Shown here one piece after another: positions 1 to 33,921 of a DNA stretch of 33,921 nt. How positions within the stretch are numbered: position 1 is the first letter of the stretch; each line of letters opens with the position of its first letter. A program made the translations under genes and the position numbers. The stretch is from Hyphochytrium catenoides (Eukaryota > Protista > Hyphochytriomycota), in contig FLMG01002414.1 in assembly GCA_900088475.1 (NCBI GenBank), forward strand, positions 1 through 33,921, given 5' to 3'. The notes below the pieces were generated by a model. The model was not told the DNA's origin and made no database searches. It saw only the letters and a program-made list of their open reading frames with translations.

Positions 1-321
1 GGCAGGATGGGTGTAGTCGATGCCGCTGTCAATGATGCCCACCTTGACTCCTTTGCCAGTTATGTTCAGCTTAGTGTGAACCTGGTTCATTGCTGTTCTG
101 TTATGAGCAAACTTGAGCTGCGGCTTGGCTGTAGCTTTATCCACGACGACTGCGCTTCCTTGACCCGATTTAGTGATGATGAAGTTCTGAGAGACGTTGT
201 CAACGCTAGCGGTGAGATTTGCCACTGCGGAGATATCGGTAGGGTTTTTGAAGTTCAGAGAGATGCCGTTAATCACCGAATCAAAAACCGTGCGGACTTC
301 GTACCCATTCCCTAGATTTAA
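1..321 (-). pseudogene. Inverted N-terminal part of a subtilisin-like S8 protease (I9-type prodomain plus catalytic Asp motif); runs off the left window edge
   Basis: The reverse complement of 321->1 is open and reads LNLGNGYEVRTVFDSVINGISLNFKNPTDISAVANLTASVDNVSQNFIITKSGQGSAVVVDKATAKPQLKFAHNRTAMNQVHTKLNITGKGVKVGIIDSGIDYTHPA. TGKGVKVGIIDSGIDYTHP is the classic subtilase Asp motif (catalytic D codon at 30-28). It is not in the supplied ORF track. Confidence 0.9.
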
Positions 322-2896: not shown

Positions 2897-3254
2897 CTCG
2901 TACTTCCTAGTAGAGTAATTGTTGTTGCCGATAACAAGTACAAGTAGCTTTGTCAAGTCAAGTATAAGGTGTAATTACTTGTTACTTGATAACGGAACCA
3001 GAGACATGAAAGGAAACCTTCGAAACGGAGACGAATTTTTTGGAAGTTTGTCACACGCTTTGACACGGGAGTCAGCCACTGAAAGAAACAGGGAAAGAAA
3101 GTTAATAGACCGGAAAAAATGGAGAGCCAGAGTTATGAGAGACAAAGAAGAAGGGACATTTGTACCAGAAGAATCTCCGAGAGGAAGACAGAGCGAGAGA
3201 GAAAGAGCGAGTACTTGTATTTACAGGAAAGAAAGAGGTCAGAACCAACCAGGA

Positions 3255-3366
3255 AAGACCGAGAGAGACGGAGAGGGAGAGAGATGGAGAAAGAGAGAGA
3301 GAGTGAGGGAGAGGCAGACTGTGCGGGTAAGGGGGTGCGAGGAGAGAGAGAGAGAGAGAGGAGAGG

Positions 3367-3426
<60 letters not shown>

Positions 3427-3530
3427 AGAGAACGGAGAAATGAAGAGAGACAGTGAATGATGAAACAGGGAGAGACAGGTGAACAGAACTGAGAGAGAAA
3501 CAGAGAAAGAGCGAGGGAGAGAAGAGCGAG
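3255..3530. repeat. GA-rich microsatellite region containing a pure (GA)25 tract at 3371-3420
   Basis: Directly visible. It generates the spurious ER-repeat and SL-repeat ORFs in the track. Confidence 0.95.
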
Positions 3531-3737
3531 TGTTGAAGGGGGAACCGCACAAAGTACGGTTTTCCCCTGCATCAGATCATCGAAGGCTATCATCATCCTC
3601 TCAAGTCTCTTTCGGCCGAATAGCCAGCACGCTCGCTACAGTCTCTTCTTTCTCGATTCTGGGAGCACACACAAGCCAAGACAAGAGGCAGAGCCGGTCC
3701 AGTGTTTATTGAAGACTTTCTCTCACTTCTTTCTTTC

Positions 3738-6624: not shown

Positions 6625-7574
6625 TCATTTTCCTCTTTCTCGGATAGTTCCGTTCGCACTCCCCTTCTCTCTCTCTCGCTCCCTCTCTCTCTTCTCTCCC
6701 TCACTCTCACTCGTTCTATTTAAACCTTTCTTACTCCGTAGCCATAGAGGAGACCAAGGATAGACGAGCCGCGTGCCTTTGGCCTCATATGAATACCTTC
6801 TATTGTTTATATAACAAGACGATGAAGCACTTGGTTGACTAAATTTTTAAGAGAGGCCAAGCCATCGTGAAAGAGAGCACGAAGAAAGCTACTAACTGGG
6901 AAAATCTATCGACTCCCATTCTTGTCCTTCTCTCTCCATCTTTTCTCTTTCTCACCCGCCATATTCTCTATTTTATAGCGTGCCCATCTGCTTGCCTGCG
7001 CACAGGGGGTCCTCTAACTCTTCCGTAGCTCTTCTTTTCTCTTACCTCTTCCGTCTCGCGCAACCTCCTATCGATCCTGCTACCTGTCCTCCGTTTCCTC
7101 CTTCGGTCTTTTCTTCCCAATGGGAGGATGGGCTCTCTCTCGCTCTCTCATCACGCTTACTTTCGCTCCCTCTCTCCGCCCCTGCACCTCTCAGTCTTTG
7201 TTCTTTCTCTTCCTCTCTCTCTCTCACTCCCTCTCTTCTTTCTCTCTCTCCCCTCTCTCTCTCCCTCTCTCTCTCCTTTCCCTCTCTCTCTGTCTCTCTC
7301 TCTCTTTCTCTCTCTCGTTTCCTCTTTTTCTTTTTGTCTCATCTCGCCTTCCTTGATGACTCTCTACAACAGCGCGCTCTCTCTCCCGTCAGATTTTGTC
7401 GCGGTTTTGACTTATCACTTACTCCATTTAGTTATGGGCGGTTAGTCTATGGGTAGGTGAGCAATACTCAAGCCTTGTGTTTTAAACAAGAGTTGGAGTG
7501 TGAGGCTAAGGTTTAGATCGTTAGGTTTACGTTATGCCCGAACTAAAAGATCGTCTGTCCCCTCTCTCTCTCTC

Positions 7575-8720: not shown

Positions 8721-11700
8721 CATTTGCTCTGTCTGTCCGCTAAGCGCTGATCGCGATCCTTCCTTGATTACAGGCTGTCCTAGCTGGAGATGCGCAGCAG
8801 ATTGCCACAGCCGTGAAGAATATACCTCAGGCTTATGTTCAGTAAGAGCTGATCTGTCCCCTTTCCCTCTGTTTCCGTTTCCCGTCATCAAACAATCTCT
8901 GCCCTGAGATGTGTCGTTCCGCCTGTCCCAAGGGGCTCTGACTGATGTCAGTCCTACTTTCTTTTACACATGCTCTAAGCTCATGGTCTTTGGCTGCCTG
9001 CGGCATCTTTAGCTGTGTTTGTTACCCTTCTTTTCATCTCATGCACTCTCTATCACGCTTCTTCGGTGCGCTAATTATGCCCCTTTCTGTCCTTCTCCCC
9101 TCTCTCTCCTGCTGTACAGGTACATCAAGGATATGTATAAGGAGAGTCCTGGCCATGTGATCATCGAGACTTTCCTGATCTGCTTTATTATCTACATCAC
9201 CTTCTTCAAGAAAAGGTTGGCAGGCTCCTCCTGCACTTTCTTCTCCTCCTTCTCTTCTTCTTATTCATTGCGTTACTCGTCGGCAAGGTTCCCTCCCGCC
9301 GTCATTCGCATCTTGCTTGATACTTCCGCGGGCTTCAAAGTCACATACGCCTGGACCCCTTGTTTGGCTGCTACTGTCTATCTGGCATGGGTCTGGAAGT
9401 CTGTTTCTTTGAGGAGTGTCTGAAGGCTGTATCTCTTGAAGAGAGAAACTTAGTCTATTTGAACCGTATGATCCGCAGCGATGACCCGGCACAAGAAGGA
9501 GGAGGTTACATCCCGTCAAGTGTGCTTACTAAGAGAGAGGTAGACGAGCTGCTGGAGGATTGGCAGCCAGAGCCACTCGTGCCTAAGATACCAGAAGAGG
9601 TCCTCCAAGCTGGAGGTGAAGAGCTGGTAAGAAGCTCAATGAAGAGAGGAAGAGGGGGAGACAGGCATATGCCCACTGATAGTTCTTGTCGGTCTCATGG
9701 ACGAACTCGTCCTCGACTTTCTAACCATACTCCGCTTGGTCCTGACTGCCCCTATTCATCTTTGGGATTGCAGGTTGTTGAAGCTTCGGGAACGACGCAT
9801 GTGAAGCTGCAAGGCAGGGACGAGGAACTTCTTAACTTTGCAACATTTGACTATCTAGGCATCGGTGGGAGGCCAGAAATGAAGGAGGTCTCGTTGAAGA
9901 CAATGGACAAGGTGTGTACGAATCGGGGCGGGGGCCATAGACCGAGGTGGAGAGTAATGGGAACCAGCACAGTGAAAGCAGGTATACAGGGAAGAAGGAT
10001 GACGTTTAGCACTTGAAGACTGATAGCGGCTACTACGAGGGTGACACAGCGGAGGCAGAAAGACAGGGAGTGCATAATGGTGAATGGGTTAGTGTGATAG
10101 GGACGGGGGAACGACAGGCGAGAAGGGAGAAACTAACTAGCCTATCCATGCAGTTTGGGCTAGGCTCTTGTGGACCTCGAGGGTTCTATGGGACCATCAC
10201 GGAACACCTAAAGGTCGGAGAGCGTAGGAACCAGGAAGAACAGCCGTGAAATGGAGCTTACAAAGTCTTTGTTTTGCAGCTCTGCCTTTCCCCTACTGTC
10301 GTTGTCTAACTGTCTCTTCTTTCACCTGTAACACATGTCGTATACTTCTCTCACTTGCATCTGACACTATTGACTCTCTCTTTCTGTCTCTACTTTCCCA
10401 GTTGGAGGATAAGATTGCCAAGTTCTTCGGCACCAAATCATCCATCACATACTCAGATAATGCATCCACATCATCGTCCGCTGTTCCTGCTTTCTCCAAG
10501 AAGGGTGATCTTCTTATAGTGGACGCTGGCGTCTACCATACCCTGACAACTGGTAACCGATATACACCCAGAAGCGGAGACGGATTGTCCATTAGTAACC
10601 GCCCCTCGTCACTTTGGATACTTTTTGCTCGGTCTTTCTCTCTTTCAGGTGTTCAGCTTTCACGTAGTCAAACAATTTACTATAAGCACAACGATATGGA
10701 GGATCTAGAGAGGGTGCTGAAGGCCGTGCAGGTAAACCTATTTGACTACACATTGGAGACCATTTGAGCGTTTGGGGTGCTCCCACCTATGTCAGACGAG
10801 AGATGGGCATTGAGAGACGGGATGCAAGTGTAGAGAGAACAAAGAAGTAGATGAGGAACGTTGATAGCCTCTGATATATTTGTTCTTGGCTATGCAATGT
10901 ATGGTATAGGATAAGGACCGCAAGTTGGGCCGTTCTTCTGATTGTCAGCGGCGGTTCATTGTCACTGAAGGGTTGTTCCACAACTACGGAGATGTCTGCG
11001 ATCTACCGACTTTGGTGAAGCTTAAGGAGAAGTACTTCTACAGACTCATTGTTGATGAGACTAACTCTATAGGCGTCTTAGGTAGTCTCTTGCGGCTCAA
11101 GCCCCGCTTTCTACCCCTGTACTACTTTCGATCTCTCTTCCTATCACCCCTTGTCTATCCTTCTGGGGAAGTCCATTGAGAAGGCTTGCAGGTCTGCCAC
11201 CCACTGTCAGAGAATATTTGCTGCTACCGCATTGGACTTGTCGCTTGGCACTTCCTGCCTGAAACAACCGCCTCACCGTATGGACCTACTCTTTCCCTTC
11301 GTTGCTTGTTGGTTAGGCAAGACTGGTCGGGGCCTGACGGAGCATTTCAATCTTCCGATATCCTGTATCGATATTTTGACTGGTTCTTTGGAATACTCTC
11401 TCGCGTCTATTGGAGGTTTCTGCATTGGAAAAGAGGAAGTTGTTGACCATCAAAGGCTGGGAGGCGCAGGATATGTATACTCGGCCTCCGCGCCCCCTTT
11501 CCTATGTGCGGCAGCGACAAGGGCTCTAGAGATTTTGGAAGGGGAAGGGGAAACCTTGTTGAAGACGCTAAGAGATAATGCCAAGATACTCTATGAAGGC
11601 CTACGAAAACTTCCTCAACTGGAGGTAGGACGATCTTCCTTGCTGGATTTTGGCTCATCTCCGTTCTGCTCGCTTTCCTTACAACGTTTTCCGTCGGCCC

Positions 11701-12730
11701 ACCACTGTGATTATTGGGCAAGGACTAAATGTCTTCCATCTATGCCTGCGTCATTCCTAGTCCTCAGCGGCTATTCCGCACACCAAACAGTCTGTTTCTT
11801 CCTCCTTTGACTCCAAACATCTGACACATCTCGCCTTCCCCAGGTTACGAGTGAGCTGGGGTCTCCGATCATCTACTGTCGTATCTCTGCTGACCTTCTA
11901 GAAGAACGAAGTCTGGACGATTCTTCACCGGATGATTGGTATAAAGTCAGAGACATACTTGGGGAGATTCGCCGTGAAGCGCTAAACAGAGGTAAGTGGC
12001 TGAAGAAAGGGGAAACTTCAGAGAAGAGACAGTTGAGTAGGGATACCGTATATGTATATTCGCTAAAGCTGAGGCCTTAGAGGCTAAGCGACTGACTTGG
12101 TCTGAGGCCAACAGCCAGCGAGCATAGTGCGGAGGGCACGTTGGATTCAGCAACAGAGAAAAAAAGAATTAGTTGATAGGGCTTGATAAGAGATATAGAA
12201 CCACTACAGAGCAAGAAGACTGATTATTGCTACACCAGGACTCGTCCTCGTTGCCATCAACCACATTCCAAGCATGGTTGAGGTCCCACCGCCCACCCTT
12301 CGACTGATAGCTAAGGCTGTGCACACAAAGGAGCACATTCAAGCTGCAATAGATGGTGAGACTGCCCCGATCCCCTGTCTGTTCTCCATCGCTTGTTTCT
12401 CGAGTTCACTCCTTTTTATCGCACATGACTGTTGACTTTCTTCAACTTCCTTCAAACCTCCTTCTACTTTTCCTGCTTCTTTTGCGCATTAGGAGGTGAT
12501 TAGTCCCTTGCAGAAGTCTCCTGGGTGCTTACACTCGATTTCAACATTCTTCGTTTCTAGCGCTAGGAGGGGCCTGTGAAGCTGTTCTTGGGAAGGTAGA
12601 AGCCGGCAATAAGAAGAAAGCTTCCACACCAAAGAAGAAGAAAGAGTCAACAGACAAGAATAAGGCGGTAGACACTCCTCTTAGGCGAAGCACTAGGACG
12701 AAGAAACCTGCAGATCTACCAAATCTGTAG
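8373..12730 (+). CDS. LCB1: Serine palmitoyltransferase subunit 1 (LCB1/SPTLC1), ~569 aa, 13 coding exons; N-terminus slightly uncertain
   Basis: Phase-consistent exons: 8373-8423, 8774-8841, 9120-9215, 9479-9626, 9774-9911, 10154-10213, 10402-10552, 10649-10731, 10910-11081, 11317-11624, 11844-11991, 12239-12355, 12561-12730. Motifs: N-terminal TM ([18 protein letters not shown]), [88 protein letters not shown]. It has [14 protein letters not shown], which lacks the PLP-binding lysine of LCB2 (GTFTKS), identifying it as LCB1. A probable upstream intron lies at 7992-8359. Confidence 0.95.
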
Positions 12731-13102: not shown

Positions 13103-16100
13103 TCACTCCTCGTCATCTTCATCACTCTGAAGACTGCCGAGATCAATATCCTCGTCATCCTCTTCTCCGTCATCTTCCGTAATGAAGAAGCTCTCTTCAT
13201 CATCCCACCCGCTTGACTCATCCTCTCCCTCACTCTCTTCGTCATCTTCCGCTCTCTCGTCAGTCTCATCACTTCCATCAGCCAATCCGTCAATGAAATT
13301 AGCAATGGCCTACAACGATAGGGAAAGCAGACGAGAGCAGGGGTCAACACGTCCGGCAAAGTGAAAGAACACAGCCACATGCTAATGTGGGAAGAACTAT
13401 TTACGATCGTTCTTACTTCAGACTCATTCCCTGACTCCTCCTCCACACTGGATCCTTCCCACTCATCGTCATCCTAAGGACAAAGGGCGAGAGACAAAGA
13501 TCAGTCTGATCCATTTAAAAGTGACAATATCTGTCGCATCTGCCTCTCCTCTGTGTACCTCTTCTGAGTCCGCCACAGCGTCATCGACATCTGAGTCTGC
13601 CTCATTAGGACGCTGTCTTCCAATCTAGAAGACGAGAGCATGACTCAGAGGTGCGTTTTGAAAGCTGCTGATCTTTAAGATAGACACAAGGATCCAGCGT
13701 AACAAGACGAGAGGGAAAGAGAGGGAGCTAACAACAGAATTAAAAATGCCTTCGTCCTACCTCATAGAGTCTCACTGAGGTCTCTGCATTCATCGGTCCT
13801 ACAAAGTTAGGGTACCATGGTACGCCTTCCACAGTCTAAGGAAACAAGAGAGATACCAAGTACCCGAGTTAAGCTCTGATAACCTTCTTAGGACTGCTCT
13901 CTGCCTTGCTACGCTTTTCACCTGTCGACCTCCCATTCCTTCTCGTTCTCCTTCCCTGTCTCGCCTTTGCTAAGTCAATGATGCACTTACCGCTAGGTAA
14001 CTATCATTGTCATCAATGGCTAAATCGTAGAGCTCTCTCTCCACATCAATGGTGGCAATGTCTCTATAATCTTCAGCATCCAAGACCTTGTAAGTAGAGG
14101 GCCACTTTCGGCGTTTCACTTGCTCACCCTCGTCCTGTGTAGGCCAAGATGTAGACGCGTGAATACCCGGGAAAAGGATAGAAAAACGACTGCAAAAACA
14201 GAAGGAATGGATGCTCTTCCCAGCGCCCAGAGACAGAGTGTAATGCAAGGAAGGAGGATGGACGGCACCAGAAGCAAGCGGAGAGAGAGTATCAGTACCA
14301 TCTTCGGTCTAAAGGAGTAGATTATGTCCCCAGCATTAGTGAACTTCGTCACCGACTGATCAAGAGAAGGAAGCATGCGAAGAAGCTTGAAGGTCCTTAT
14401 GTCCCAGACGGCAGAGTTGATGATAACTTCACTCCTCAGAGGATGGAAGTTCCCAAAGCCAAACGATGAGAGTTTATCAAACTTGTGCACCACTCTCTGT
14501 GGTACCCTCAGATCCCACAGCACACCATCCGATAAGATCAGCTCATCAGAAGGCGAAAAGACGGCGCTAGTGTACTTATGATGGTTGCTGTAAGGTATCG
14601 ACTCTAAAGAGAAGAGAAGAGAGCCCATCTCCGAGTCAAACACGTCCGTTCTGTGGAAATGAGAGAGTGAGACTTTAGCTACCGAAGTGGAGCAGGTAGT
14701 GGTGAACTGAGCAGTGATGGCACAAAATTGGCTTCAGGTCCCACGCCCAGAATGCCAATGCATTGTCCAGCCCTGCTCTTTCCCATTCTTTAGCACATAG
14801 TCGCCTTGACACGCACCTATTTGCATTGGGCACCATAGCGAGAAGCTTGTCGCCACCATGGGAGAAACTCCCTCCCTTACATTGCGGAAATGTGAAGAGC
14901 GATCGGTGCATCGTGGCGGCGTCCCAGAGTTTAACCTCTCCAGGTCCCGAGTGGGAAGACGTCAGCAGCAGGCGCGAGTTCTAACAAGCAAAATTGCAGG
15001 GTCGCACGGAAGGGTCAGGGTAGGGAATATGAGAAGACCATGGCAAAGATCAGGGACAAGCGAAACATGGGGCCATGACGACAGTTCAAACTGAACACGA
15101 TGAGTTTACTACAGTTGTTAGCGCCCGGCCATAATTGAACCCAAGTAGTAGAGAAGTGGCTCACCGAGGAAGTATCAATCTTGGATACTCCAAAGTCATG
15201 ACACTTCCAGGTGTCAACAACATTCATTTGCAAGAGGTTGAAGAGAGAGATGTCACCCTCATCCGATCCGCAGACTATCCGGTCTGGTCCAAAGAACGAA
15301 ACAGTTGTGATGATGCTGTCCTCCTCGCCATAGCGCCGCCACTGGAACCACAGCAAGCAGTGAGAAGAGATGAAGAGTGTAGACGCGGTGGATTGTGGAT
15401 GAGTGCATCGTCACACTTTGCGTTTTGGAGTATACTGATCATGGAGTATACTAATCAACTAAGTGCAGCATATAGTACTTCTTTATGGCAGCGGTAGGTA
15501 AGATCATCCACGGAATAGCACGGCTAACCTGCCTGAACCGAAACAAAAGGCTAACGGCCACTAAGAGGAGGGATATGGAGTAAGAGATTGCGTACCGGCC
15601 TGAATCTGCTATGGACGAGGCGCTTGCAGAACCTCTTGCCCTTAGGTCCACCAAAAGGAGGAACGATCTGCCTCTCCAAAAGAAGTGATGCTAGGTTCTG
15701 TGGCGCAGAGAGAGGTACGGGAGTGGGGCACTTGTGCGGTGAAAGCAAAGAGAGGGGAGGAAGCGTGGCAATTGGCTTGGCACAAAGTCTGTGCTGGTGC
15801 CTCAAATACTCCGTCACTATGTTTTCCAGTTCTGTCTTCCCTCCGGCTCCTGCTCCACCCGCTGTCCCCGCTGTCGAAGGGAGTTTTCTTGAGCTCGGGG
15901 TCTTCTTCTACAAGTGAATAAAGCTTGGAATTAGGTTCATTTATATGGACACGAAGTCAGTGAAAAGCTCAGGAAGTGTGCTTGATCGCAACGGCCAGGA
16001 TGAACGACACAGAATGTCCTATGGCTAAGGGAAGACGACGTCACAAAGTATAACGAAAGACATGTGTACGGAAATATGGCTTGTAGTCCGGGGAGGCCGA

Positions 16101-24266: not shown

Positions 24267-27200
24267 ATGATGCAAATGGACTCACCGATAGCAGGCTCAG
24301 CAAGCGCAGGTTACGGCGCCACTGAAGGTGAGACTGACGCACTTTGCTTGTTTTCCTCCTCTTCCCCAGCCCTCGAGCTGGTTAGGGATGTCTCCTTCTC
24401 TTTTCATCGAGAGTGGGCCAACAAGGACGTTTCGGCCTACATTTATTATACTTCTTACATCTTCTTCTCTTTACCCTCAGCTCTGTCTGTTGGATCCTTG
24501 GAACCACCTACGGTACCCAGACAGATTGCATATCCCCGCCTCCAGTCAGAACTTCGGCTAAAGCTCGATGAAGTGGACAGGAGAGAAAGAATCCTCCCAA
24601 CCAATAAGGGGAGTGATGGACACACAGAAGAGGAGGGAAGCACTCCTCTCCTTCCTAGTGCTCTCTCTTTTTCTTCAGGAGTGGATGAGGTGGTTTGGGA
24701 TCGGGTGATCAAGAGCCTCGATCGCTCTGTATGTGTTCTGTACAACTGCTGTCAGGAGGAGGACTCAGAAGAAAAGTGTGTGAAGGCCATGGAGCTCTTC
24801 GAACTCTACCTTTCTGACTTTGAGCGGGTAAGAGCTATAACTTTGTCTTATCTTAAGGGAACCATTCCGCTTCTTTTGTTATTGTATCGCTTTAGTCCTT
24901 GGTCCTTAAGCTCTATGACACTATTGACTCTTTGTTTCAAGGTTAAACGACGCAGGGTTCATTCTTGTTCTCTATCTGATAAGCCTAAGACTGAGTTGCT
25001 CTCGGAACCGATCCTTCACAGCCTTACTTATCAGCTCTCTTAGTTCTACTATGTGCTCGGCGCTATTCCCTCCTGCGCTTAGCCTCTGCTTATCTCACCT
25101 AGTAGGTGTCTTTCTTGCAGATCTTTTCGAGGGTTCCTCGCGTCATCGCCTTATCGATTGATGATATACCACGTTATATATTCATATATTGTGATTCTTG
25201 GCCCCATCCTGACTGGCTTTGCTTCTATTACAGCTTCTTCACACTAAGCGGCTCAGTCAACGGCTAGAGACGTGGGGGACCGGTGGCGAGGAGTTGTCCC
25301 TCTTGCCGTTGGACGAAGGTGGGCAGCGTTCGAAATTCTCCCCTCTTCACTTTCCCGTCACCTTAGCACGCCGTCAGCTCATGCCATTGTTCCACTATCT
25401 TTTCCCATTATTGGTAATAGGGGCAGACTCTTTTTGCAAGCATGCTTAACGTCGAGCACGTCTTTCTGTAACAATTTTCATTCTAGACCTTCCTCCTCCT
25501 ATCTAAATAACCGCCTCCATGCCCAGCGCTTCCTCCGTTCTCACCGTTCAACGTTTGTGTCGCGTTCAGGAGGGCGAGGACAAGTGCAACAGGAAGGTGG
25601 TGGTCGCTGGCACGCTGCAGGACTGTATTGCAACGGTCCTCGAGACTCCTTTTATCACAGTAATCACAGTGACACCCAAGCTAGCATGGAACCATGGGTA
25701 TGATGTGGCTAAACGTTTTTTATCCCTGATGGCAAGCATTGGAGGGGTTTAGCGGAAACAGTGGACCGTACAGGAAAGGGTCAAGCGAAAAGCGTCGTTC
25801 TAGGGCCATGAGAAGTAGGAAAGGACACTTGCTTCACAAACGTTGAAGAGATAGGCGAAAGGACAACCAAGCGCGGAAGTACTTACAAGTGCCCTACTCC
25901 GTCAATTCTTGGCAGGTGCATGGGCCCGAGGCATTGGGACTGGAAGATGATGATATGGAAGAGGATTTGGAAACGCTACGCCTCTTGGACATGGACTTTA
26001 TGGCCGATGGCGATCATATCGCAGAAGAACCCGACGAAGGAAGGGAGAGACTTCTTCGGAGCTGCAGTCCCTCCACCGTAAGCACTATTGATGAGGGTGA
26101 GGAAGAAGACCGAGATAGTGAGCAGCCTACGGGTAAGTCACTTAAGAGGGATGGGAAGTATCGGTCCTTCTCCCTATCCCTCAACCATTCTATGAGGAAT
26201 ATATAACAGTGTCTCCACGCAGATAATGATAATGTGAGGAAGGGATCCAGGCTAAATCTTCGTATTGATATTGAGGAGGTGACCCCTTTGATTGCGAAAA
26301 GCACTGAGGAAGATAGGGGACTAGGCGGCCAGCCTAGGTGTGTCGGCACACTCTTGTTTTCGTGTTATCTCTTCGCCTACAATCTCTTACCTGTTTCTCT
26401 CCTTTGTCAATAAAACCTGTTTGCGTCTGTCTTGGTCAGCGAGGGCCTCCTTCTCTCTTCCTCCGCTTCACCCCAGCATCGTCTACACCAGAAGCTTTCT
26501 TCCCCCGAGAGGAGGAAGAAGACTCCGTCGGAGACAAGAAGGAGACATGAGAAGAAGATGTTGGTAGCTGAGCAGAATCGGAGTCGAATAGACAGCGAGA
26601 GACAGGCTAAGCTCAGAGTTGCGGCGGACAGAGTGAAAGGAGTTAGTCAACGACAGGCTAAGAAGCTGCAACAACAGGAAGAGACCTTGCTTGCGAAGTT
26701 GGACAGAGCAGGTGATTTTCATTTCTCTCTTCCCAGAGATCGCTTCCTGTTCCTTTTGCCGTTCGGCTGATCATCGTTCCTGTACTCTATGTTGGCTACT
26801 AGGTAGTCATTCTTGACTTCCTAGCGCTCCAGACCCCGGATTTGGGGCTGAACTATAAAGCTATGCATGCTCTGCTCTGTGAATCCGTGACAGCTCTTCT
26901 TGATGAATGCCAACTGTCGTCTTCCTTTTTTTTTTCTTTCGCTATGTCTTATCCTTCCAACTTAGGTGAGCTACACTCGGCGCATCTGCGTACTATCGCT
27001 CGGAAGGCTGGAAATGAGAATACGAAAGTGGAAGAAGTCGGATTCATCAAGACACTCACAACTGAGAATATGAAGGTGAAGCAGAGAACGCTGATTCATG
27101 CTTCAAGGCCGAGGGGATTGCTAGTTCTGACTGCGGTATGCTGCAGGTCAGCCTAGAACAGAGGTTAGAGAGCAGCGAGCTAAGAAGGCAACAGCAGCTT

Positions 27201-30200
27201 CTCCGGCTGAGGGAAAAGGCAAAGGGTAAGGCAGAAAAGGAGAGAGAGGCTGCTGAAAGAAGGAAGGAGATAGAAAGCGCTGGAGCAGAACGGTTGGCAG
27301 CTCTTCAGAAACGATTGGAGGATGTAGAGGCCAGGAGGCAGGAAAGAAGAGCCGCGGCAAAGAGACGAGAGAGTCTTAACAAGGTAACCACGTCTTTGAC
27401 TACCATCCGATGATATGCAGCTCGCGACGGGGCCATGAGACCGCTATGTTCCCTGAATGCCTACTTCCTGCTTCATGGTATTTTCTCTTCGCTGGGATCT
27501 AAGCGCGTCATCAAACGCATCACTTAAGAGCCAGGCGTACGTTCTTTGGTCCTTCACTATCTCACATTCGTCTGTGAGTCTCATGAATCCTTCTTGCTCA
27601 TAGACTGACCTTGACATGAAGACCCCGGAGAAGTCAGAGCACTCTCCACTTTCTCTGTTGGCAGGGGTCGAAAATGTCATGGGTATCCGGCCAAGAAGAG
27701 AGCGAGAGAAGTCTATGCGTCAGAAGGCTAGGAAGATCAGACAGAAGCTAACTGCAACATCACCGGGTACGGTCCTGCGTTACTCCCTATCTATGCCTTA
27801 CTCTGCCTGTTTCCTCCGTTTTCCGGTCACCGCCATCTTACTGAAATTGCTTTCACCACCAGGTGTTAAAGAGTCGGATCTCCTCATTCCAAAGTCTCTC
27901 CCCGCAAGTGAGGCGACGTCAAGAAAACTTCAGCGCTGTCTCGAGACTCTGGCGCAGACGTATGAGAAGTATAGCGGAGACGAGTTCCCCTCCTATTCTT
28001 CAGCTGGAAGGGTAATTCTTCCTAGAGACACCGTGCAAGCGGAGGCGGCACTGAGAGAGATTAGCAGGATTACAGATCTCAGATCCGATAGTGATCTACA
28101 TTTGATTCGGTCTCTTGGAGGGATACGAGTACTATCTCTGTTGGCCACGCTTGAGATACTGCTTCCTTCCCTCTCCTCAGCTGCACTTAGTGTCCTGGCA
28201 ACACTTTCACTTCTCCCGGCCAACAGAGACTATCTACTCGCCTCTGATCTTCTACCCGAGCTGGTAGATCTCCTAGTGCGAGTGTTAAGCAGCCGTAAGC
28301 CTTTAAGCTCGACGGATGAAGATCACGAGCAGCTGATTATCAATGTGCTCAATCTGATGATCCTTCAGCTATGGCATAAGCCTAGGGAAGAGCTGCAGCC
28401 AACTAAGAGCGAAGTTTTTAGGTGCGTCTCCCGCCATCGTGGTGTCTTTCCGTCTTTGTCTCTGCTGCGTATCAATTTCGCAGCGTGCTGTGTTTCCGTA
28501 CGATAACTCTATCAGAACCACTCTTTAGTAAAGGAGACAGTTTCTCTTACTTCTGTTAACTCATCGAGTTGACCACCCTTGTGTCTACTACTAGGTATCT
28601 AGTCAACGCCGGGGCTATGATGCGGATTGCCGACCGGTTCATTTCTTACCGACAGGGCTATTATACGGGTGTCGAGGCTTCCAACACGCGCCTACTGCTG
28701 AAAAGCTTGGCGTTTTTGGAGGCACTGACGGGATCCGCGGCCGGGTACGAAACATTAAGGAGAGACAGGGCGTGGACCGACGCACAACACGCCGCTAGGC
28801 TAATCATGCACCTAGAGCAAAATGGAACTATAGGCCCATGACTTGGTTACTCCTCACCAATATCCTTCTTGTCTCTGACCTCTCTCACACAAATCGCTCC
28901 CTTTTGACATCCTTCAGTACCCGTGCCCAACCCGCTTTTACCATGGCAGACCTGCGCCTCCCCGTCATAAGTGTCTTTAAAGAGACTGGACTCATGGGTA
29001 AAGTAGAATGCTTTCATCCCTCTCTACGTCAAGGACAGACTCTGACTCTGCTCCATCAGGTATTGTCTCTCTCTTAATCTCTTTGATATGGGCGAATCGA
29101 GGCCCAAACAGCCAGCAGGTGGACTCTCAGGACCTCTCTGTTCCCATGATGAAGATTGCTTGGATGGCTCTCAAAGTTCTGAACAATGTTGCGAGAGTGG
29201 ATGTGAAGTTGGTGCAGGTATGAGAATCTGGAATGAACTGAAGAGCGTCGAAGGACCAGAAGATTAGAAGTAAGGCCGACGCGAGACCAACAAATGGCCT
29301 ATAAAGGACGGAAAGACCTGCACAGAGAGAAAGTGATTGTCGTAGGAGGTTTGAGGAATATCACTCTCCGGCAGAAGGGCCAGGTCTTTGAAGAGAGGAC
29401 GAGAAGTGGCATCCCATGAGCTTTCTCCAAACCACTGTTAATGTGCTCTCATATCCATGGACGCTATCCATCCTTTGATTCCCGTTAACTATTTTGCAGG
29501 CTACTCTTTGCTCGGCTAGCGTACAGCGAGAGTTTAACCACCTTCAAGGATATCTTCTCCCCAGGATCCATCGCCAGCTTCGTCCTTCCTTTTCTCTCTC
29601 TCCCTCTTCTTCTCCTTCTCCCTCCTCTTCGCTCTCTCCTCATGATTTAGACGAGGCCGATGAACTGTTGCACGAACTGCTCATCCTCTTGGGCTACTAT
29701 GCCCTACAAAACCCTAAGAGTCAGGAGACCTTAAGATGGGGAGTGCCATCAGTTCTGCAGCAACTCACAGCTTTGCCATTTAGATATTTCTCTGATGTCA
29801 GGTAAGGGCAAGCACCTCTTCTTTTGCAAGCGAATTATCGAGTTAAATAGTTGTTTCGCCTTTGCCGAAAGATTCCCTTCAAACGATGGGGTATCCCTAT
29901 ATGTTCTCGGCTTGATGACACGGTTTAAAACTGACTTTACTGTCCTTCTATGGACCTGCCTCTGGCACCCGCACTCTTGTCGCACTTAATATCGCTAATC
30001 CTTGTCACATTGAATGTCGCTAATCCGGTCTTACCAGATTTCAGGACATCCTCTTTCCGACCCTTATAGCTGCGTGCTTTGAGTCTCCCCAAAACTGCTG
30101 GATTGTGGAGCAGCAATGCAGCTGCAAGTTTCTTCTGGTCTATCTCCTTAGACATAAGACTAGCCGCGAAGACGGTATCGCAGCCGTGAAGAGTGATGTA

Positions 30201-30477
30201 GTCTCTTCCCTGGCGTACCATTGCTCAGGGACAGCAGAGGCTGCGGAATTTGAGGAAGGTAAGAGCCTTCATCTGGATTGTGCCCTTTTCCTTTCCGTCC
30301 TCATGTTCGGTTCCTTCGTCTTTCCTTCCTCGCCCAGCCGATGGGGAAGCTCATGACGTTCCCTCCTGGATAAATTTTGCCAATCGGTTTCCTGTCTTTC
30401 TCTGGGACCGAGCCATCCAGTTCTTTTCCTCACCGGCCAAGTGTGGAGATTGGGGGCTACTAGATTGTCAAGAGTAA
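24267..30477 (+). CDS. SCAPER: S-phase cyclin A-associated protein in the ER (SCAPER) homolog, ~17 exons
   Basis: Approximate exons: 24267-24327, 24481-24827, 25234-25318, 25570-25697, 25916-26132, 26223-26337, 26440-26711, 26966-27075, 27147-27383, 27604-27766, 27863-28421, 28595-28744, 28918-28997, 29060-29217, 29500-29801, 30038-30258, 30338-30477. Motifs: SCAPER_N-like WDRVIKSLDRSVCVLYNCCQEEDSEEKC...DFE, LHQKLSSPERRK, IARKAGNENTKVEEVGFI, coiled coil, LLHELLILLGYYALQN..Q..LRWG.PSVLQQLTALPFRYFSD, ILFPTLIAACF, RFP..LW..A..FF. Confidence 0.9.
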
Positions 30478-31061
30478 GAGGAAAGTCGAGAGATGGTGAA
30501 AGAGACAGATGAAGGCACTGTGAGAGGGTCAGGTAGAAGTCCTTCTTTGACTCTGAGTTTGGAAAGACTGTCCACCATATTCGGCAGCGCTCTTCTTAAT
30601 TGTGGTTAGTGTCTTCTGACATGGAGCAGCGCTCCTTGTCACAGAAGCTAAACGCATGTGTACTCATAAGCACAGAGCACTAGGCACAGAAGCAGGCTGT
30701 GACCTCATTACGTGCTACATAATAAACTATTTATCAGGTAAAGAGCGATTAAGGTATCACAAGCGTAGAGGACAGTGAGAGTATAGCAATGGGAGAATGT
30801 CATACTTGGTGGCAAGATATAGGTCCATACAGAGCCCTTAATCGGAAGTCGCACGTCGAACCAGAGCACGCCACTGAAATAGCGCCGCCAATAATAACCA
30901 ATACCGGGCTCATCTGCCCTAACCTGATGCTTTTAGGCGCCGGTGTGAAGTCCTATCCTCTCTATTCTTGTATCTCAGGTTTGGGAAACTTCTTTTGTCA
31001 TTGCCTCCAATGATTGACGCAATTCACCCCGCCACTGAAGGACGAGTATGCGCAGTCTCCC

Positions 31062-33501
31062 CTAGCGTTGTACTTGATGAAGGTTCGACATCAGCCGAAA
31101 GACTGCAAAGGGATCGATTGGGGTCAGGGTAGATAAAGAGTGGGTTGATCCAACGAAACCACAGGCAAACATCAGATAGCACACAATGACGTCGAAGGAA
31201 GGAAAGATCTGCGTGTCGTTAGGACTTTCAACGGTCGTTAGAGGGCTACCATTTGCTCCGTTACCTTTGTTGAGCATGTCCGAGGTCTCATCGATGGCGG
31301 TTCTACACGATGCAACTGATGATGATTTCTTGCACAGAACCAGGAGTGTGCCCCGTTCCATACGACGAAGAAATATGCGGGAGTTTCTACTTCCTTCTAA
31401 GTCCAGAGTTAACGCGCTGTCGCCGTTGAAAGACACTGGAAATACCACGTGGTGCCAAAGAAACGACGCAGAGCAACTAGTTAATACTCTGGAGGTCCAT
31501 GAGATCCATGGGTAGAGAACATGGTGTTTCTCACTTAGCGAAGAATGGCGGGAGTCAAAGTACAGGCTAGAAAATAGAGTTCAAGGTGCCGCCACCACGA
31601 GGAAGAGGGCGGGAACTGCCAGAGAGGAGGCAAGTGCTCCGGAAAACTAGATGCAAAAGGCTATTCAATGCGACACACTGGCAACGTTATGGAAGAGCCG
31701 AGAGAGACACGGAGCAAAGGGCCCAGGAGGAGCGGGGAACATGTCAACAAGGAGCGGCTAGCAAAATCCTTTTTGCCCAGGAAGGGTTCGACAGGCTATC
31801 TTACTTATATCCGTTGAAAGACTAAGTAAGGCTTGCAAGTTTGCCATCACACCGAGCTGATCCACTTCTGAGGTCGAGTGCGTGACAGAATCATCCGTCA
31901 CAAGTACTGCCTTCATAATCCCCCGACGATGGTGTACTATTCCAAGCAATGACATGCAGTGAGAAAGAGTTAGTGTCCAGAAGAGGAAAATCAAGTAACA
32001 TGAACTTCGTGTGCCGTCTCTGAAGATAGTATGCTGACCAAAGAATTAGCGCAGAGAAGGCAGTAGACGAGCTGATGCAGGAAAACAAGTCCAGAGCTCT
32101 CTTCTCTTACATTTTGAAAGTATTGGCTTCACAGACCGTCGTATTACCTGCACGAGCATAGATGACAGATACGGAGTCTTAAAACCGAGTGATACCCCCA
32201 GGGTATAGAGGACGGACAACTGTCACGAGGAAATGTCACAGCCAGCTCATACAGTGATGGGTGGTCTTTCAATTCAGAAAGATCTGAAGGAGAGACACCA
32301 GATTTCTCAGTAGTTGGTGGCAGGATAGCTCAACAGAGAGGAAGCATTCCTTAGGGCGCTTGGCCTAAGGAGATGTGTGACAGACCTCTGAGACCCTGGA
32401 ATTGAAGCTATGGAAATCCTTAAGGTTGTGTGCGCCTGCACCCAAAGATGAAGAGTGTTCTTCCACGAAGGCAGAGAGGAGCTCGTTGGCGATCAACTTT
32501 CCAAAGTCCTGGCCGTAGGTGTGAATTAAGGCTCCATAAGGCACAACAGACGAAGACAGGAAAGTATTCTGGACGACAGCAATGAGGGTTCTGAGCGCAT
32601 CGACGAGTAGAACATAGGGAACAATAGAACAGAGACTGAGATGGAAGGACATAAAGCGCAAGAAGCTATTCATCTACGACGACGGCGAAGGGAAAAGAGT
32701 AGGATATGTCTTCTTTGTCCTGGAAAAGCGCGCAAAAGACTTTGGCTGTCTCATTGATGACGAGGGTCACGGCCACTGCAATAACAAATAACAGACATCA
32801 GAGGGAGCTGACCCAGATGGCTTTGCATTTACCAGAGAACTATGCTTTTGCAGGCAAGTTGGGGAGGATAGGACTGCGATTCTACTCTGAAGGATAAAGC
32901 GCCATAGGGGTGGATAGTGATGTGGAAGCCGATCGGGGAAAGCACCACGATAAGGAGACGGAAGGGGCGAAGCGACGAACCGTGAGAGAGCTCAATGTAT
33001 GACACTGGAAGCCCTGTCGTTTTCGAAGAGAACTCTACCAATGCAGTAAGAAGTGAGCCGACGAGCCGTGGCTGGCAGAAGGAAAGGGTGTCAGCACGAG
33101 GACAAAGAGGTCGGCGAAGCATTTCGCGCTTTGTCATCTCATCTCCCTCTTTGACAAACCTCCTACCCACGTCCCTTTCCGACGCTTTGTTTGATGCTCT
33201 CTCTCTCTCTCTCTTCTTCTCTCTCTCTGAGATCTTTTTCTCGGTCTCTCTGGGATGAGAAATATCTGATGCCTAACCTCATGCCAGCTTTTCTTTCTCT
33301 CAGAAGAGGAAACCTAGTTCCAGCCATGAAGCTTTCTTCCTCTCTCTCCTTTTTTTGCTCTGTCTCCCTGCCTCTGTGTGTGTGTGTGTGTTTGTCTCTC
33401 TCTTTCTCCCTCTCATCTCTTACCTGTGCCACAGCGTTGACAAACTCTTTGGAGAAAAGGAGCAAGCCGCTTGTGGACATTATCAAGACAGTTCGAAGCA
33501 T
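31062..33501 (-). CDS. Unnamed ~248-aa protein, predicted N-terminal longin domain plus C-terminal roadblock/LAMTOR-like domain; 8 exons
   Basis: Phase-consistent exons (5'->3'): 33501-33424, 33071-32981, 32775-32708, 32514-32386, 32147-32111, 31936-31805, 31435-31265, 31102-31062. Protein: MLRTVLIMSTSGLLLFSKEFVNAVAQPRLVGSLLTALVEFSSKTTGLPVSYIELSHVAVTLVINETAKVFCALFQDKEDGQDFGKLIANELLSAFVEEHSSSLGAGAHNLKDFHSFNSRVSEVIRRSVKPILSKLHHRRGIMKAVLVTDDSVTHSTSEVDQLGVMANLQALLSLSTDIMSFNGDSALTLDLEGSRNSRIFLRRMERGTLLVLCKKSSSVASCRTAIDETSDMLNKVFRLMSNLHQVQR. The gene structure is well supported; the domain call rests on pattern recognition only. Confidence 0.8.
32515..32707 (-). other. U12-type (minor spliceosome) AT-AC intron, 193 nt, intron 3 of the longin/roadblock gene
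   Basis: The minus-strand 5' splice site is GAC|ATATCCTAC (U12 consensus RTATCCT). The 3' end is GAGCCTTAATTCACACCTAC|GGC, with a CCTTAA branch motif ~11-12 nt before a terminal AC and no polypyrimidine tract. Removal joins exons in phase 0 to give FQDKED-GQDFGKLIA; read-through hits a stop. Confidence 0.85.
33195..33420. repeat. CT and GT microsatellites inside intron 1 of the longin/roadblock gene
   Basis: (CT)n at ~33197-33228 and ~33396-33420, and (GT)n at ~33375-33391 on the + strand. Confidence 0.9.
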
Positions 33502-33921
33502 TGCCCTCTTCTGTAGGACGCCAACGAGGACGACAGAGCTCCTACTACACTACGGTGCCAGGGCCATGATGCCAACTTGTCCTGAGGATGTCCTTATGGT
33601 CTTCGAGTTCCGGGTAAAGTTGCAAGCAATCCAACAGTCAAGATTGGCTACAGGGATGAGGACGGCGCATTGATACCGACTGACAAACGCGACAACAGAA
33701 AAATTGACTGGAAGACAAACAGGATGAAGCCTTGGAGGGAGGACGAGAGCTAGAGAGATGCCAACGAGGAAAGTCAGGAAGCCGCCCCTTCGAAGAGGGA
33801 TGCCAATCTGCTGGGACCTGGTGCAGCGGAGAAGCCCACGGATGGGAAGGAGTGAATATATATAGATACGGATGACGAGCCAGAAGCGAGAAAGCAATAG
33901 AGAACCGCACCGAGCAAGTTG

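What the first reader, a model, noticed from the sequence alone, without database searches (positions are those of the whole stretch)
31062..33501. Unnamed single-chain longin + roadblock protein: candidate uncharacterised small-GTPase regulator
Seen: a clean 8-exon gene encoding 248 aa with two compact alpha/beta halves. Residues ~1-125 follow the longin order beta-beta-alpha-beta-beta-beta-alpha-alpha (VLIMSTSGLLLFSKEF / RLVGSLLTALVEFS / SYIEL / VAVTLV / VFCALF / FGKLIANELLSAFVEEH / DFHSFNSRVSEVI). Residues ~128-248 follow the roadblock/MglB order alpha-beta-beta-alpha-beta-beta-beta-alpha (KPILSKL..GIMKAVLVT / DQLGVMANLQALLSLSTDIM / LTLDLEG / RIFLRRM / TLLVLC / RTAIDETSDML). Established: longin domains form small-GTPase GEF/adaptor platforms (MON1-CCZ1, HPS1-HPS4, Fuzzy-Inturned, TRAPP sedlin-like subunits, sigma adaptins). 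Roadblock domains do so in Ragulator/LAMTOR, Rag C-terminal domains and MglB, and both folds are expanded in Asgard archaea. Inference: a stand-alone fusion of the two matches no named animal or yeast protein that I recognise. It may be a subunit of an ancient, patchily retained endomembrane or nutrient-sensing GTPase module. Hosting a U12 intron would be compatible with an old eukaryotic gene.
Basis: partly seen in the sequence, partly recalled or inferred. Interest (0 to 1): 0.8.

Follow-up and report, generated by a model that had tools for sequence, protein, structure and literature searches.

The report
Conserved unnamed longin-plus-roadblock protein gene
This is a real 8-exon gene for a 248-residue protein built from a Mon1/Fuzzy-type longin domain followed by an MglB-type roadblock domain; it belongs to a conserved but unstudied family found in scattered protist and red-algal lineages, and it most likely serves as a docking or regulatory platform for a small GTPase.

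Summary
A minus-strand gene (33501..31062) has 8 exons and encodes 248 aa, with six GT-AG introns and one U12-type AT-AC intron.

- **Gene model.** The spliced product aligns end to end with ~250-aa proteins of other eukaryotes. Identity is 57.6% to Aphanomyces astaci, and all 27 family-conserved columns match.
- **Selection.** Two haplotypes in the DNA runs differ by about 5-9% within introns. None of the 52 listed variants falls in an exon.
- **Fold.** Residues 1-126 form a longin domain, closest to Fuzzy LD1 (Z 12.9). Residues 127-248 form a full roadblock domain, closest to MglB (Z 15.4).
- **Characterised relatives.** No reviewed or solved protein has this architecture. The nearest are the first two domains of tri-longin Rab GEF subunits (Mon1, Fuzzy, HPS1), at about 10% identity and with a different domain arrangement.
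- **Distribution.** The family (107 hits, all unnamed) occurs in oomycetes, ochrophytes, Rhizaria, cryptophytes, cyanidiophyte red algae and the breviate Pygsuia. Asgard archaea hold look-alikes of the same size.

The GTPase-regulator function is inferred, not shown. The spliced window protein itself could not be handed to the structure tools, so orthologues stood in for it.

The parts
33424..33501 (-). Exon 1. ATG at 33501-33499; encodes residues 1-26 (longin strands beta1-beta2).
   Evidence: Donor GTAAGA. The junction Q26|P27 is shared with Aphanomyces and Choristocarpus. The region upstream of the ATG is variable between haplotypes, including the only upstream AG (33511).
33072..33423 (-). 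Intron 1 (352 nt, GT-AG), containing CT and GT microsatellites.
   Evidence: read laying skipped the repeats at 33186-33242 and 33363-33415.
32981..33071 (-). Exon 2. Residues 27-56 plus one base. Carries the invariant motif QPRLxGSLLTA at the start of helix alpha1.
   Evidence: This exon found the family.
32776..32980 (-). Intron 2 (205 nt, GT-AG, phase 1).
   Evidence: Haplotype variants lie here. The position is shared with Aphanomyces.
32708..32775 (-). Exon 3. Residues 57-79 (longin strands beta4-beta5; invariant D76 and D79).
32515..32707 (-). Intron 3: a U12-type AT-AC intron of 193 nt. 5' site ATATCCTAC, branch motif CCTTAAT at 32531-32525, terminal AC.
   Evidence: The junction D79|G80 restores the conserved DGxxFG motif without an indel. 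Haplotype variants are confined to 32532-32692, so both splice motifs are untouched. Not shared with Aphanomyces or Choristocarpus.
32386..32514 (-). Exon 4. Residues 80-122 (longin helices alpha2 and alpha3).
32148..32385 (-). Intron 4 (238 nt, GT-AG).
32111..32147 (-). Exon 5. Residues 123-134 plus one base. Holds the end of the longin domain (32147-32136) and roadblock helix alpha1.
31937..32110 (-). Intron 5 (174 nt, GT-AG).
   Evidence: An allelic bubble is confined to 31941-32104. The position is shared with Aphanomyces and Choristocarpus.
31805..31936 (-). Exon 6. Residues 135-178 (roadblock beta1-beta2 and the long helix alpha2).
31436..31804 (-). Intron 6 (369 nt, GT-AG).
   Evidence: Haplotype variants lie here. 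The position is shared with Aphanomyces and Choristocarpus.
31265..31435 (-). Exon 7. Residues 179-235 (roadblock beta3-beta5 and the start of the C-terminal helix).
31103..31264 (-). Intron 7 (162 nt, GT-AG). It is open in frame, which is why a 128-codon ORF spans it.
   Evidence: Nineteen substitutions and three indels between the haplotypes all lie within 31110-31260. The position is shared with Aphanomyces.
31062..31102 (-). Exon 8. Residues 236-248 plus the stop TAG (31064-31062).
   Evidence: The C-terminal helix continues as in the orthologues.
32136..33501 (-). Genomic span encoding the longin domain (residues 1-126).
   Evidence: AlphaFold2 model of orthologue P0012, strand/helix order b-b-a-b-b-b-a-a. 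Z 12.9 to Fuzzy LD1. Sub-threshold Pfam Fuz_longin_1 and Intu_longin_1 hits in relatives.
31065..32135 (-). Genomic span encoding the roadblock domain (residues 127-248).
   Evidence: Order a-b-b-a-b-b-b-a. Z 15.4 and rmsd 2.1 A to MglB. Robl_LC7 hits in 10 of 44 relatives. The family profile hits dynein roadblock chains over profile positions 126-213.

Best explanation
The locus is an intact gene under purifying selection. Its 248-aa product belongs to a conserved eukaryotic family of ~250-aa two-domain proteins. The N-terminal domain is a longin domain of the Mon1/Fuzzy/HPS1 'LD1' type. The C-terminal domain is a complete roadblock domain of the MglB/LAMTOR2 type, including the C-terminal helix.

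Both folds are the standard platforms on which small GTPases of the Rab, Arf/Arl, Rag and MglA kinds are bound and switched. I therefore infer that the protein docks a small GTPase and acts as, or as part of, its exchange factor, GTPase activator or membrane scaffold. It would do this alone, as a dimer, or with an unknown partner.

The longin half is the more conserved, with invariant motifs SGL and QPRLxGSLLTA at the beta1-beta2 hairpin and the start of helix alpha1. It is the likely functional face, as LD1 is in Mon1-Ccz1 and Fuzzy-Inturned.

Shown here: the gene model, family membership, the two folds, and the absence of a characterised equivalent. Inferred: any contact with a GTPase, its identity, and the direction of regulation.

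Confidence by part: about 0.95 for a real gene of this family with longin plus roadblock folds, and about 0.5 for a GTPase-regulatory role. The overall figure given is 0.6.
For: - **Gene and splice model:**
- **Exons invariant between haplotypes that diverge by roughly 5-9% within introns:**
- **Family:** 107 members found with a profile, most of the full-length ones about 240-270 aa.
- **Structure models:** AlphaFold2 models of two members have pLDDT 91.2 and 91.9 and pTM 0.88 and 0.87, with identical element order.
- **Roadblock half:** Z 15.4 to MglB, 14.7 to an Asgard roadblock and about 12.4 to LAMTOR2.
- **Longin half:** Z 12.9 to Fuzzy LD1.
- **Foldseek top hits:** all are GTPase-regulator subunits, namely MON1A/CCZ1, Fuzzy/Inturned, BLOC-3, MglB, the Rag C-terminal domain and Ragulator.
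- **Conservation by half:** the longin half has median identity 55% against 37.5% for the roadblock half.
- **Literature on mechanism:** LD1 of the Mon1/Fuzzy side supplies most of the Rab interface (PMC12383261). Dimers of longin and roadblock domains are general GTPase platforms (PMC3747258 abstract; PMC10933270).
Against: - No GTPase partner, complex, localisation or expression data exist for any member.
- Longin and roadblock folds also serve roles unrelated to GTPases, in SNAREs, coat small subunits and dynein LC7.
- Pfam matches in relatives are few and weak: the longin models score below their curated cut-offs, and Robl_LC7 matches 10 of 44 members (best E 1.8e-4). The window's own exon pieces match nothing.
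- The structures are of orthologues at 57.6% and 40.6% identity, not of the window protein.
- No RNA evidence was available for this organism.
Confidence: 0.6

Rival explanations
1. The protein is a structural scaffold or adaptor subunit that does not act on a GTPase. Candidates are a dynein LC7-like light chain, a regulator of a coat or SNARE as in the sigma/zeta small chains or Sec22/Ykt6 longins, or a Ragulator-like anchor that only tethers other proteins.
For: The best sequence-level hits of the family profile in the PDB are dynein light chain roadblock proteins (E 0.12-0.7). The longin half also resembles VAMP7, Sec22b, Ykt6, AP-3 sigma and COPI small-chain longins at Z 11-12.4. No GTPase domain is fused in the longer members.
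Against: The roadblock half keeps the C-terminal helix that LC7-type light chains lack, and it matches MglB best (Z 15.4). From my own knowledge, not tested here, cyanidiophyte red algae lack dynein and flagella, yet they have this family. There is no SNARE motif or transmembrane segment. The best two-domain matches are Rab GEF subunits.
Confidence: 0.25
2. The protein is a shortened paralogue of a tri-longin Rab GEF subunit on the Mon1/Fuzzy/HPS1 side. It has lost its third domain and still pairs with a Ccz1/Inturned/HPS4-type partner to activate a Rab carrying the Y-K/R switch-1 motif.
For: The top Foldseek hits in the PDB and Swiss-Prot models are MON1, Fuzzy and BLOC-3 subunits over their LD1-LD2 regions (E 1e-8 to 1e-5). 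There are sub-threshold Pfam hits to Fuz_longin_1 in 4 members and Intu_longin_1 in 3 members. The Atlas aligns the family model to a 619-aa Mon1-like cluster over residues 1-229.
Against: Identity is only about 10%. When both domains are aligned the rmsd is 12-17 A, so the domain arrangement differs. The second domain has roadblock topology with an N-terminal helix and matches MglB far better than any Mon1 LD2. The family has a tight length of about 250 aa across distant lineages, which suggests an old independent architecture rather than repeated truncation. Archaeal proteins of 218-247 aa fit the two-domain shape better than Mon1 does (TM 0.53-0.65).
Confidence: 0.12
3. The locus is not a functional gene. 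It would be a chance chain of ORF fragments or a decaying pseudogene.
For: No RNA run was listed. No identical protein is present in the public collections searched.
Against: The product aligns over its full length at 57.6% identity to an orthologue with no frame break. All 27 conserved columns are kept. Five intron positions are shared with Aphanomyces. None of the listed haplotype variants lies in an exon, although the introns differ by roughly 5-9%.
Confidence: 0.01

Closest known systems
Tri-longin-domain (TLD) Rab GEF subunits Mon1, Fuzzy and HPS1 (in the Mon1-Ccz1, Fuzzy-Inturned/CPLANE and BLOC-3 complexes)
   Same: They are the best two-domain structural matches (Foldseek E 1e-8 to 1e-5). 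The N-terminal domain is closest to Fuzzy LD1 (Z 12.9, rmsd 2.7 A over 124 residues). Relatives give weak Pfam hits to Fuz_longin_1 and Intu_longin_1. In these complexes LD1 is the GTPase-binding domain (PMC12383261).
   Different: This protein has two domains in 248 aa, not three in 400-650 aa. Its second domain is a roadblock with N- and C-terminal helices. Identity is about 10%, and the relative orientation of the two domains differs (rmsd 12-17 A). No partner subunit is known. The Pfam scores are below threshold.
MglB and archaeal/Asgard roadblock proteins (the GAP/platform for the small GTPase MglA)
   Same: They are the best single-domain match. Residues 119-241 superpose on M. xanthus MglB at Z 15.4 and rmsd 2.1 A over 119 of 127 residues. 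They also superpose on Prometheoarchaeum and Thorarchaeota roadblocks at Z 14.2-14.7. The C-terminal helix is present in both.
   Different: MglB is a stand-alone ~130-160-aa homodimer without a longin domain. Identity is 11-15%.
Ragulator LAMTOR2/LAMTOR3 and the Rag GTPase C-terminal roadblock domains
   Same: The roadblock fold is shared (Z 11-12.5). UniRef names two Peronospora members 'Roadblock/LAMTOR2 domain-containing protein'.
   Different: The LAMTOR proteins are single ~100-125-aa domains that form heterodimers held by LAMTOR1. No longin domain is attached to them.
Asgard-archaeal ~218-247-aa hypothetical proteins (Promethearchaeota) annotated 'FUZ/MON1/HPS1 first Longin domain' or 'Roadblock'
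   Same: They have the same size and, by predicted shape, the same two-domain build (Atlas TM 0.53-0.65 over 164-185 residues). They are the nearest non-self clusters by language-model features (0.93 and 0.92, with 197 and 193 shared features). Archaeal entries follow directly after the family's own clusters in the AlphaFold DB.
   Different: No sequence-level homology was shown here, because their sequences could not be fetched and a pattern scan of prokaryotic genomes found none. Foldseek rmsd for some is high. They are uncharacterised too.

Membership tests
Longin domain (SNARE-like superfamily) | Element order beta-beta-alpha-beta-beta-beta-alpha-alpha, forming a five-stranded sheet sandwiched by helices | tested here: met
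   AlphaFold2 models of orthologues P0012 and P0023 show E4-9, E14-19, H27-44, E51-53, E58-64, E69-75, H77-104 and H110-126. These were transferred residue for residue to the window protein.
Longin domain (SNARE-like superfamily) | Superposes on solved longin domains | tested here: met
   Residues 1-130 give Z 12.9 to Fuzzy LD1, 12.4 to VAMP7 and Sec22b, and 11.4-11.8 to Ykt6, AP-3 sigma and COPI.
Longin domain (SNARE-like superfamily) | Passes a curated Pfam longin model | tested here: not met
   Fuz_longin_1 scores 13-15 bits against a cut-off of 26.1. Intu_longin_1 has a best E of 0.0038, in 3 of 44 relatives. The window's exon pieces give no hit.
Roadblock/LC7/MglB (PF03259) | Element order alpha-beta-beta-alpha-beta-beta-beta, with or without a C-terminal helix | tested here: met
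   The model shows H128-136, E141-148, E153-155, H161-181, E188-192, E197-204, E207-214 and H218-245.
Roadblock/LC7/MglB (PF03259) | Superposes on solved roadblock domains | tested here: met
   Z 15.4 with rmsd 2.1 A to MglB, Z 14.7 to an Asgard roadblock, and about 12.4 to LAMTOR2. Foldseek TM by target is 0.74-0.81.
Roadblock/LC7/MglB (PF03259) | Sequence match to the family model | tested here: inconclusive
   Robl_LC7 matches 10 of 44 relatives (best E 1.8e-4). The family profile's top PDB hits are dynein roadblock chains, but only at E 0.12-0.7. The window's exon pieces give nothing.
Tri-longin-domain Rab GEF subunit (Mon1/Fuzzy/HPS1) | Three consecutive longin domains per subunit | tested here: not met
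   There are only two domains in 248 aa. No further exon is possible downstream, because a convergent gene ends about 600 nt away. The sequence upstream of the ATG is unconstrained between haplotypes.
Tri-longin-domain Rab GEF subunit (Mon1/Fuzzy/HPS1) | LD1 of the Mon1/Fuzzy type | tested here: inconclusive
   Fuzzy LD1 is structurally the closest and there are weak Pfam hits to it, but the scores are below threshold and members hit both the Fuz and Intu models.
Tri-longin-domain Rab GEF subunit (Mon1/Fuzzy/HPS1) | Obligate heterodimer with a Ccz1/Inturned/HPS4-type partner and GEF activity on a Rab with the Y-K/R motif | not testable with these tools
   No multimer prediction or assay was available. 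The feature is defined in PMC12383261.
Dynein light chain LC7/roadblock (DYNLRB) | Stand-alone ~96-aa roadblock domain lacking the C-terminal helix | tested here: not met
   The protein is 248 aa, has an added longin domain and has a 28-residue C-terminal helix. The distinction between roadblock proteins with and without this helix is described in PMC10933270.
U12-type (minor spliceosome) AT-AC intron, applied to intron 3 | 5' site /ATATCCTT-like, branch site TCCTTAAC-like 10-15 nt from the 3' end, terminal AC | tested here: met
   The intron has ATATCCTAC, then CCTTAAT followed by 11 nt, and ends in AC. The junction is confirmed by protein homology. Both motifs lie outside the haplotype-variable stretch 32532-32692. 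The consensus sequences are from my own knowledge.

The most novel reading that the evidence does not exclude
The family is a direct descendant of the single-chain longin-roadblock proteins of Asgard archaea. It was present in the last eukaryotic common ancestor and was then lost many times, including in animals, fungi and land plants. It represents the kind of building block from which the tri-longin Rab GEFs (Mon1-Ccz1, Fuzzy-Inturned, BLOC-3) were elaborated. In the lineages that keep it, it regulates a small GTPase whose GEF or GAP is still unassigned.
Probability: 0.2. Interest if true: 0.85.

Novelty: new variant of a known kind. Interest (0 to 1): 0.62.

Why it matters
Longin and roadblock domains are the oldest known platforms for switching small GTPases. 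They are central to ideas about how the eukaryotic endomembrane system grew out of Asgard-archaeal parts. Every well-studied eukaryotic example is either a single-domain subunit of a multi-protein complex or a large multi-domain protein.

A compact protein with one longin and one roadblock domain in a single chain is different. It is conserved at about 50% identity across stramenopiles and is recognisable in Rhizaria, cryptophytes, red algae and a breviate. It appears to be missing from the usual model organisms. It would therefore be an overlooked regulator, and a possible intermediate between the archaeal proteins and the tri-longin Rab GEFs.

The hypothesis can be tested. Members exist in genetically tractable organisms such as Cyanidioschyzon merolae and oomycetes, and the proteins are small and confidently modelled.

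For genome annotation, the gene also shows how an AT-AC intron can hide a conserved gene from standard predictors.

Tried and rejected
- Pfam on five pieces gave nothing.
- phmmer against PDB sequences with exons 4, 6 and 7 gave nothing meaningful.
- The Atlas search on exon 7 gave only noise.
- A word-index search on exon 7 returned nothing.
- A metagenome scan with exon 7 returned nothing.
- Only exon 2, embedded in a 147-codon open stretch so that the length filter allowed 250-aa targets, found the family.

**Other dead ends.**
- Adding the C-terminal exon pieces to the family alignment misplaced them (A1), so only exons 1-4 were kept (A2).
- The two halves show no internal sequence similarity.
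- Rfam found no RNA family in the window.
- A scan of prokaryotic genomes with the family's two best motifs found no relative, so the Asgard link rests on predicted shape and language-model features only.
- No RNA run was listed, so splicing could not be seen in reads.

**Readings considered and rejected.**
- An extra coding exon upstream. The only upstream AG is polymorphic and the region is unconstrained.
- Extra exons downstream that would add a third longin domain. A convergent gene occupies that space.
- A GT-AG alternative to the AT-AC intron. It would add 10 residues and remove 2 inside an invariant motif.
- Fusion domains in the longer family members. None was found.

Structure prediction on it was left out and orthologues were used instead.
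Full report
**1. What is in the sequence**

The minus strand between 33501 and 31062 carries eight exons: 33501-33424, 33071-32981, 32775-32708, 32514-32386, 32147-32111, 31936-31805, 31435-31265 and 31102-31062. Together they give a 747-nt reading frame of 248 codons plus a TAG stop.

Six introns have GT...AG ends with good donors and pyrimidine-rich acceptors. Intron 3 (32707-32515, 193 nt) begins ATATCCTAC, has CCTTAAT followed by 11 nt, and ends in AC. That is the signature of a U12-type AT-AC intron. First-stage notes report similar introns elsewhere in this genome.

The gene is complete at both ends.
- A large plus-strand gene converges on it and ends about 600 nt from its stop.
- The sequence upstream of the ATG is as variable between haplotypes as the introns are. 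This includes the G of the only upstream AG.

**2. Is it real?**

Three independent lines say yes.

(a) Homology. The spliced product, built in a script from the window, aligns over residues 1-245 with a 251-aa protein of Aphanomyces astaci (P0012) at 57.6% identity, E 1e-103. It also aligns over full length at 40-55% identity with dozens of ~250-aa proteins. In an alignment with 44 relatives, all 27 columns that are at least 90% conserved carry the same residue in the window protein. No indel falls at an exon junction. The AT-AC junction (D79|G80) lies inside the invariant stretch D-x-x-D-G-x-x-F-G. A GT-AG alternative would insert ten residues and delete two there.

(b) Gene structure. The A. 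astaci gene has introns at five of the seven positions used here: after Q26, after H56, and near residues 134, 178 and 234. The brown alga Choristocarpus shares three of them. Neither has the U12 intron or intron 4.

(c) Population evidence. The DNA runs that hold this stretch contain two haplotypes at roughly equal depth. All 40 substitutions and 12 indels that were listed lie in introns 2, 3, 4, 6 and 7 or upstream of the ATG, and none lies in an exon. Three allelic bubbles are each confined to one intron (7, 5 and 3), with at least 30 identical bases running into the flanking exons. Exons make up 29% of the stretch, so this pattern indicates purifying selection. A further 71 variants were not displayed by the tool.

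No RNA run was listed, so splicing was not observed directly.

**3. Finding the family**

Exons 4, 6 and 7 found nothing in Pfam, PDB sequences, the Atlas, the exhaustive 1.8-billion-protein search or metagenomes.

Exon 2, embedded in a 147-codon open stretch, hit 249-253-aa hypothetical proteins of Galdieria. A profile of these plus exons 1-4 then returned 107 proteins. None has a curated name or a precomputed Pfam domain. Two Peronospora entries carry the automatic name 'Roadblock/LAMTOR2 domain-containing protein'.

Named sources cover the following groups:
- oomycetes (Aphanomyces, Achlya, Peronospora, Bremia);
- ochrophytes (Choristocarpus, Discosporangium, Chrysoparadoxa, Chrysophaeum, Phaeothamnion, Paraphysomonas);
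- a rhizarian (Leptophrys vorax);
- cryptophytes (Baffinella, Cryptomonas paramecium);
- cyanidiophyte red algae (Galdieria spp., Cyanidioschyzon merolae CMT615C);
- the breviate Pygsuia biforma.

No animal, fungal or land-plant protein appeared. The search is word-indexed, so this is absence of detection, not proof of absence.

In a quick tree the window protein sits on a short branch at the base of the stramenopile-rich clade, apart from the red algae, cryptophytes, Pygsuia and Leptophrys. No identical protein is in the collections, so this gene appears to be unannotated publicly.

**4. The fold**

AlphaFold2 with the 44-sequence alignment gave confident models for two members.

| Member | mean pLDDT | pTM |
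|---|---|---|
| P0012 (Aphanomyces astaci) | 91.2 | 0.88 |
| P0023 (Pygsuia biforma) | 91.9 | 0.87 |

Both show the order beta-beta-alpha-beta-beta-beta-alpha-alpha, then alpha-beta-beta-alpha-beta-beta-beta-alpha.

Structure comparison with solved chains:
- Residues 119-241 superpose on MglB at Z 15.4 (rmsd 2.1 A, 119 of 127 residues).
- The same residues give Z 14.2-14.7 on Asgard roadblock proteins and Z about 12.4 on LAMTOR2.
- Residues 1-130 superpose on Fuzzy LD1 at Z 12.9, and on the VAMP7 and Sec22b longin domains at Z 12.4.

Foldseek ranks MON1A/CCZ1, Fuzzy/Inturned and BLOC-3 chains first, at E 1e-7 to 1e-5. The rmsd is 14-18 A, so the two domains match individually but are arranged differently.

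At sequence level the evidence is weak but points the same way. Robl_LC7 matches 10 of 44 members, with a best E of 1.8e-4. Fuz_longin_1 and Intu_longin_1 give sub-threshold hits. The family profile's top PDB hits are dynein roadblock chains over profile positions 126-213.

**5. Comparison with what is known**

Among the Swiss-Prot models only MON1 and Fuzzy match, over their LD1-LD2 regions and at about 10% identity. Nothing of similar size matches.

Among AlphaFold DB clusters the first hits are the family's own uncharacterised or plainly mis-named entries. Archaeal proteins of 240-360 aa follow, annotated with the Fuz/Mon1 first longin or roadblock domains.

The ESM Atlas gives the same picture. 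The nearest non-self clusters by features (0.93 and 0.92) are Promethearchaeota hypothetical proteins of 245-247 aa. By shape, archaeal clusters of 218-247 aa reach TM 0.53-0.65 over both domains.

I could not fetch those archaeal sequences, and a motif scan of prokaryotic genomes found none. The Asgard connection is therefore a lead, not a demonstrated homology.

Three literature searches found no paper on this family. Reviews and structures give the established background:
- Longin and roadblock dimers are general GTPase platforms (PMC3747258 abstract; PMC10933270; PMC3521125).
- In tri-longin GEFs the first longin domains form the active site (PMC12383261).

**6. How it most likely works**

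Shown: a conserved two-domain protein whose longin half is the more constrained. Median identity to the window protein is 55% for the longin half against 37.5% for the roadblock half. Invariant residues are concentrated in the beta1-beta2 hairpin (S11, G12), the start of helix alpha1 (P27, R28, and near-invariant Q26, L29, G31, S32, L33, T35), the beta5-alpha2 turn (D76, D79), and helices alpha2 and alpha3 (L92, F95, F113, F116).

Inferred: the protein binds a small GTPase on its longin face, as Mon1/Fuzzy LD1 does. The roadblock domain would provide the second half of the platform or a dimerisation or membrane-facing module.

I put the GTPase-platform role at about 0.5, and fold and family membership at about 0.95.

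Rivals:
- A non-GTPase scaffold role (0.25). The MglB-like C-terminal helix weakens this. So does the family's presence in cyanidiophytes, which to my knowledge lack dynein.
- A truncated tri-longin paralogue that still needs a Ccz1-like partner (0.12). The roadblock topology of domain 2, the different domain arrangement and the uniform ~250-aa length across distant lineages weaken this.
- A non-gene (0.01).

**7. Verdict**

The 'unnamed' and 'patchily retained' claims hold up as far as these tools can see. The U12 intron is genuine but is not positionally conserved in the two orthologous genes examined, so it says nothing extra about the gene's age. The shared GT-AG intron positions do.

This is a new variant of a known kind: a longin/roadblock GTPase-platform protein with an uncharacterised single-chain architecture. 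Its function remains to be shown.

Limits of this work:
- The structures are those of orthologues.
- There was no RNA evidence.
- No partner is known.
- The taxonomic range comes from a word-indexed search.

Noticed in passing
window 31000-33600 (runs X1, X2, X3): The sequenced organism carries two haplotypes at roughly equal depth. They differ by about 5-9% within introns, including many small indels. Short-read contigs therefore break into bubbles at almost every intron and rejoin in the exons.
   Followed up: partly
window 32515-32707: This is a U12-type AT-AC intron. Its 5' site and branch motif lie outside the haplotype-variable stretch. The position (D79|G80) is not shared with the Aphanomyces or Choristocarpus orthologues, while five other intron positions are shared with Aphanomyces.
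   Followed up: yes
window 24267-30477 (+): A large multi-exon plus-strand gene encodes a helical-repeat (ARM/HEAT-like) protein. It converges on the longin-roadblock gene, and their 3' ends lie about 600 nt apart. It was not identified.
   Followed up: no
window 33186-33242 and 33363-33415 (intron 1): CT and GT dinucleotide microsatellites lie inside intron 1. Similar CT-rich tracts give long 'SLSLSL' pseudo-ORFs elsewhere in the window (for example 3100-3600 and 6980-7456).
   Followed up: no
window 197-2400 (+), about 9360-11810 (+), 14116-14643 (-): By eye from the ORF translations, the neighbouring genes are a subtilisin-like protease, a serine palmitoyltransferase-like aminotransferase and a DCAF1/VprBP-like WD40 protein. 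None was searched.
   Followed up: no
window 31103-31264 (intron 7): Intron 7 is 162 nt long and open in the exon frame. A naive ORF finder therefore reads a 128-codon ORF (31062-31448) straight through it, which would add 54 spurious residues to the protein.
   Followed up: yes
P0096 (Cyanidioschyzon CMT615C, 390 aa), P0089 (Baffinella, 376 aa), P0129/P0130 (cryptophyte transcripts, 464 and 520 aa): Some family members are 100-270 residues longer than the ~250-aa norm, yet no Pfam domain is detected in the extra sequence. These may be insertions, extensions or gene-model errors.
   Followed up: partly
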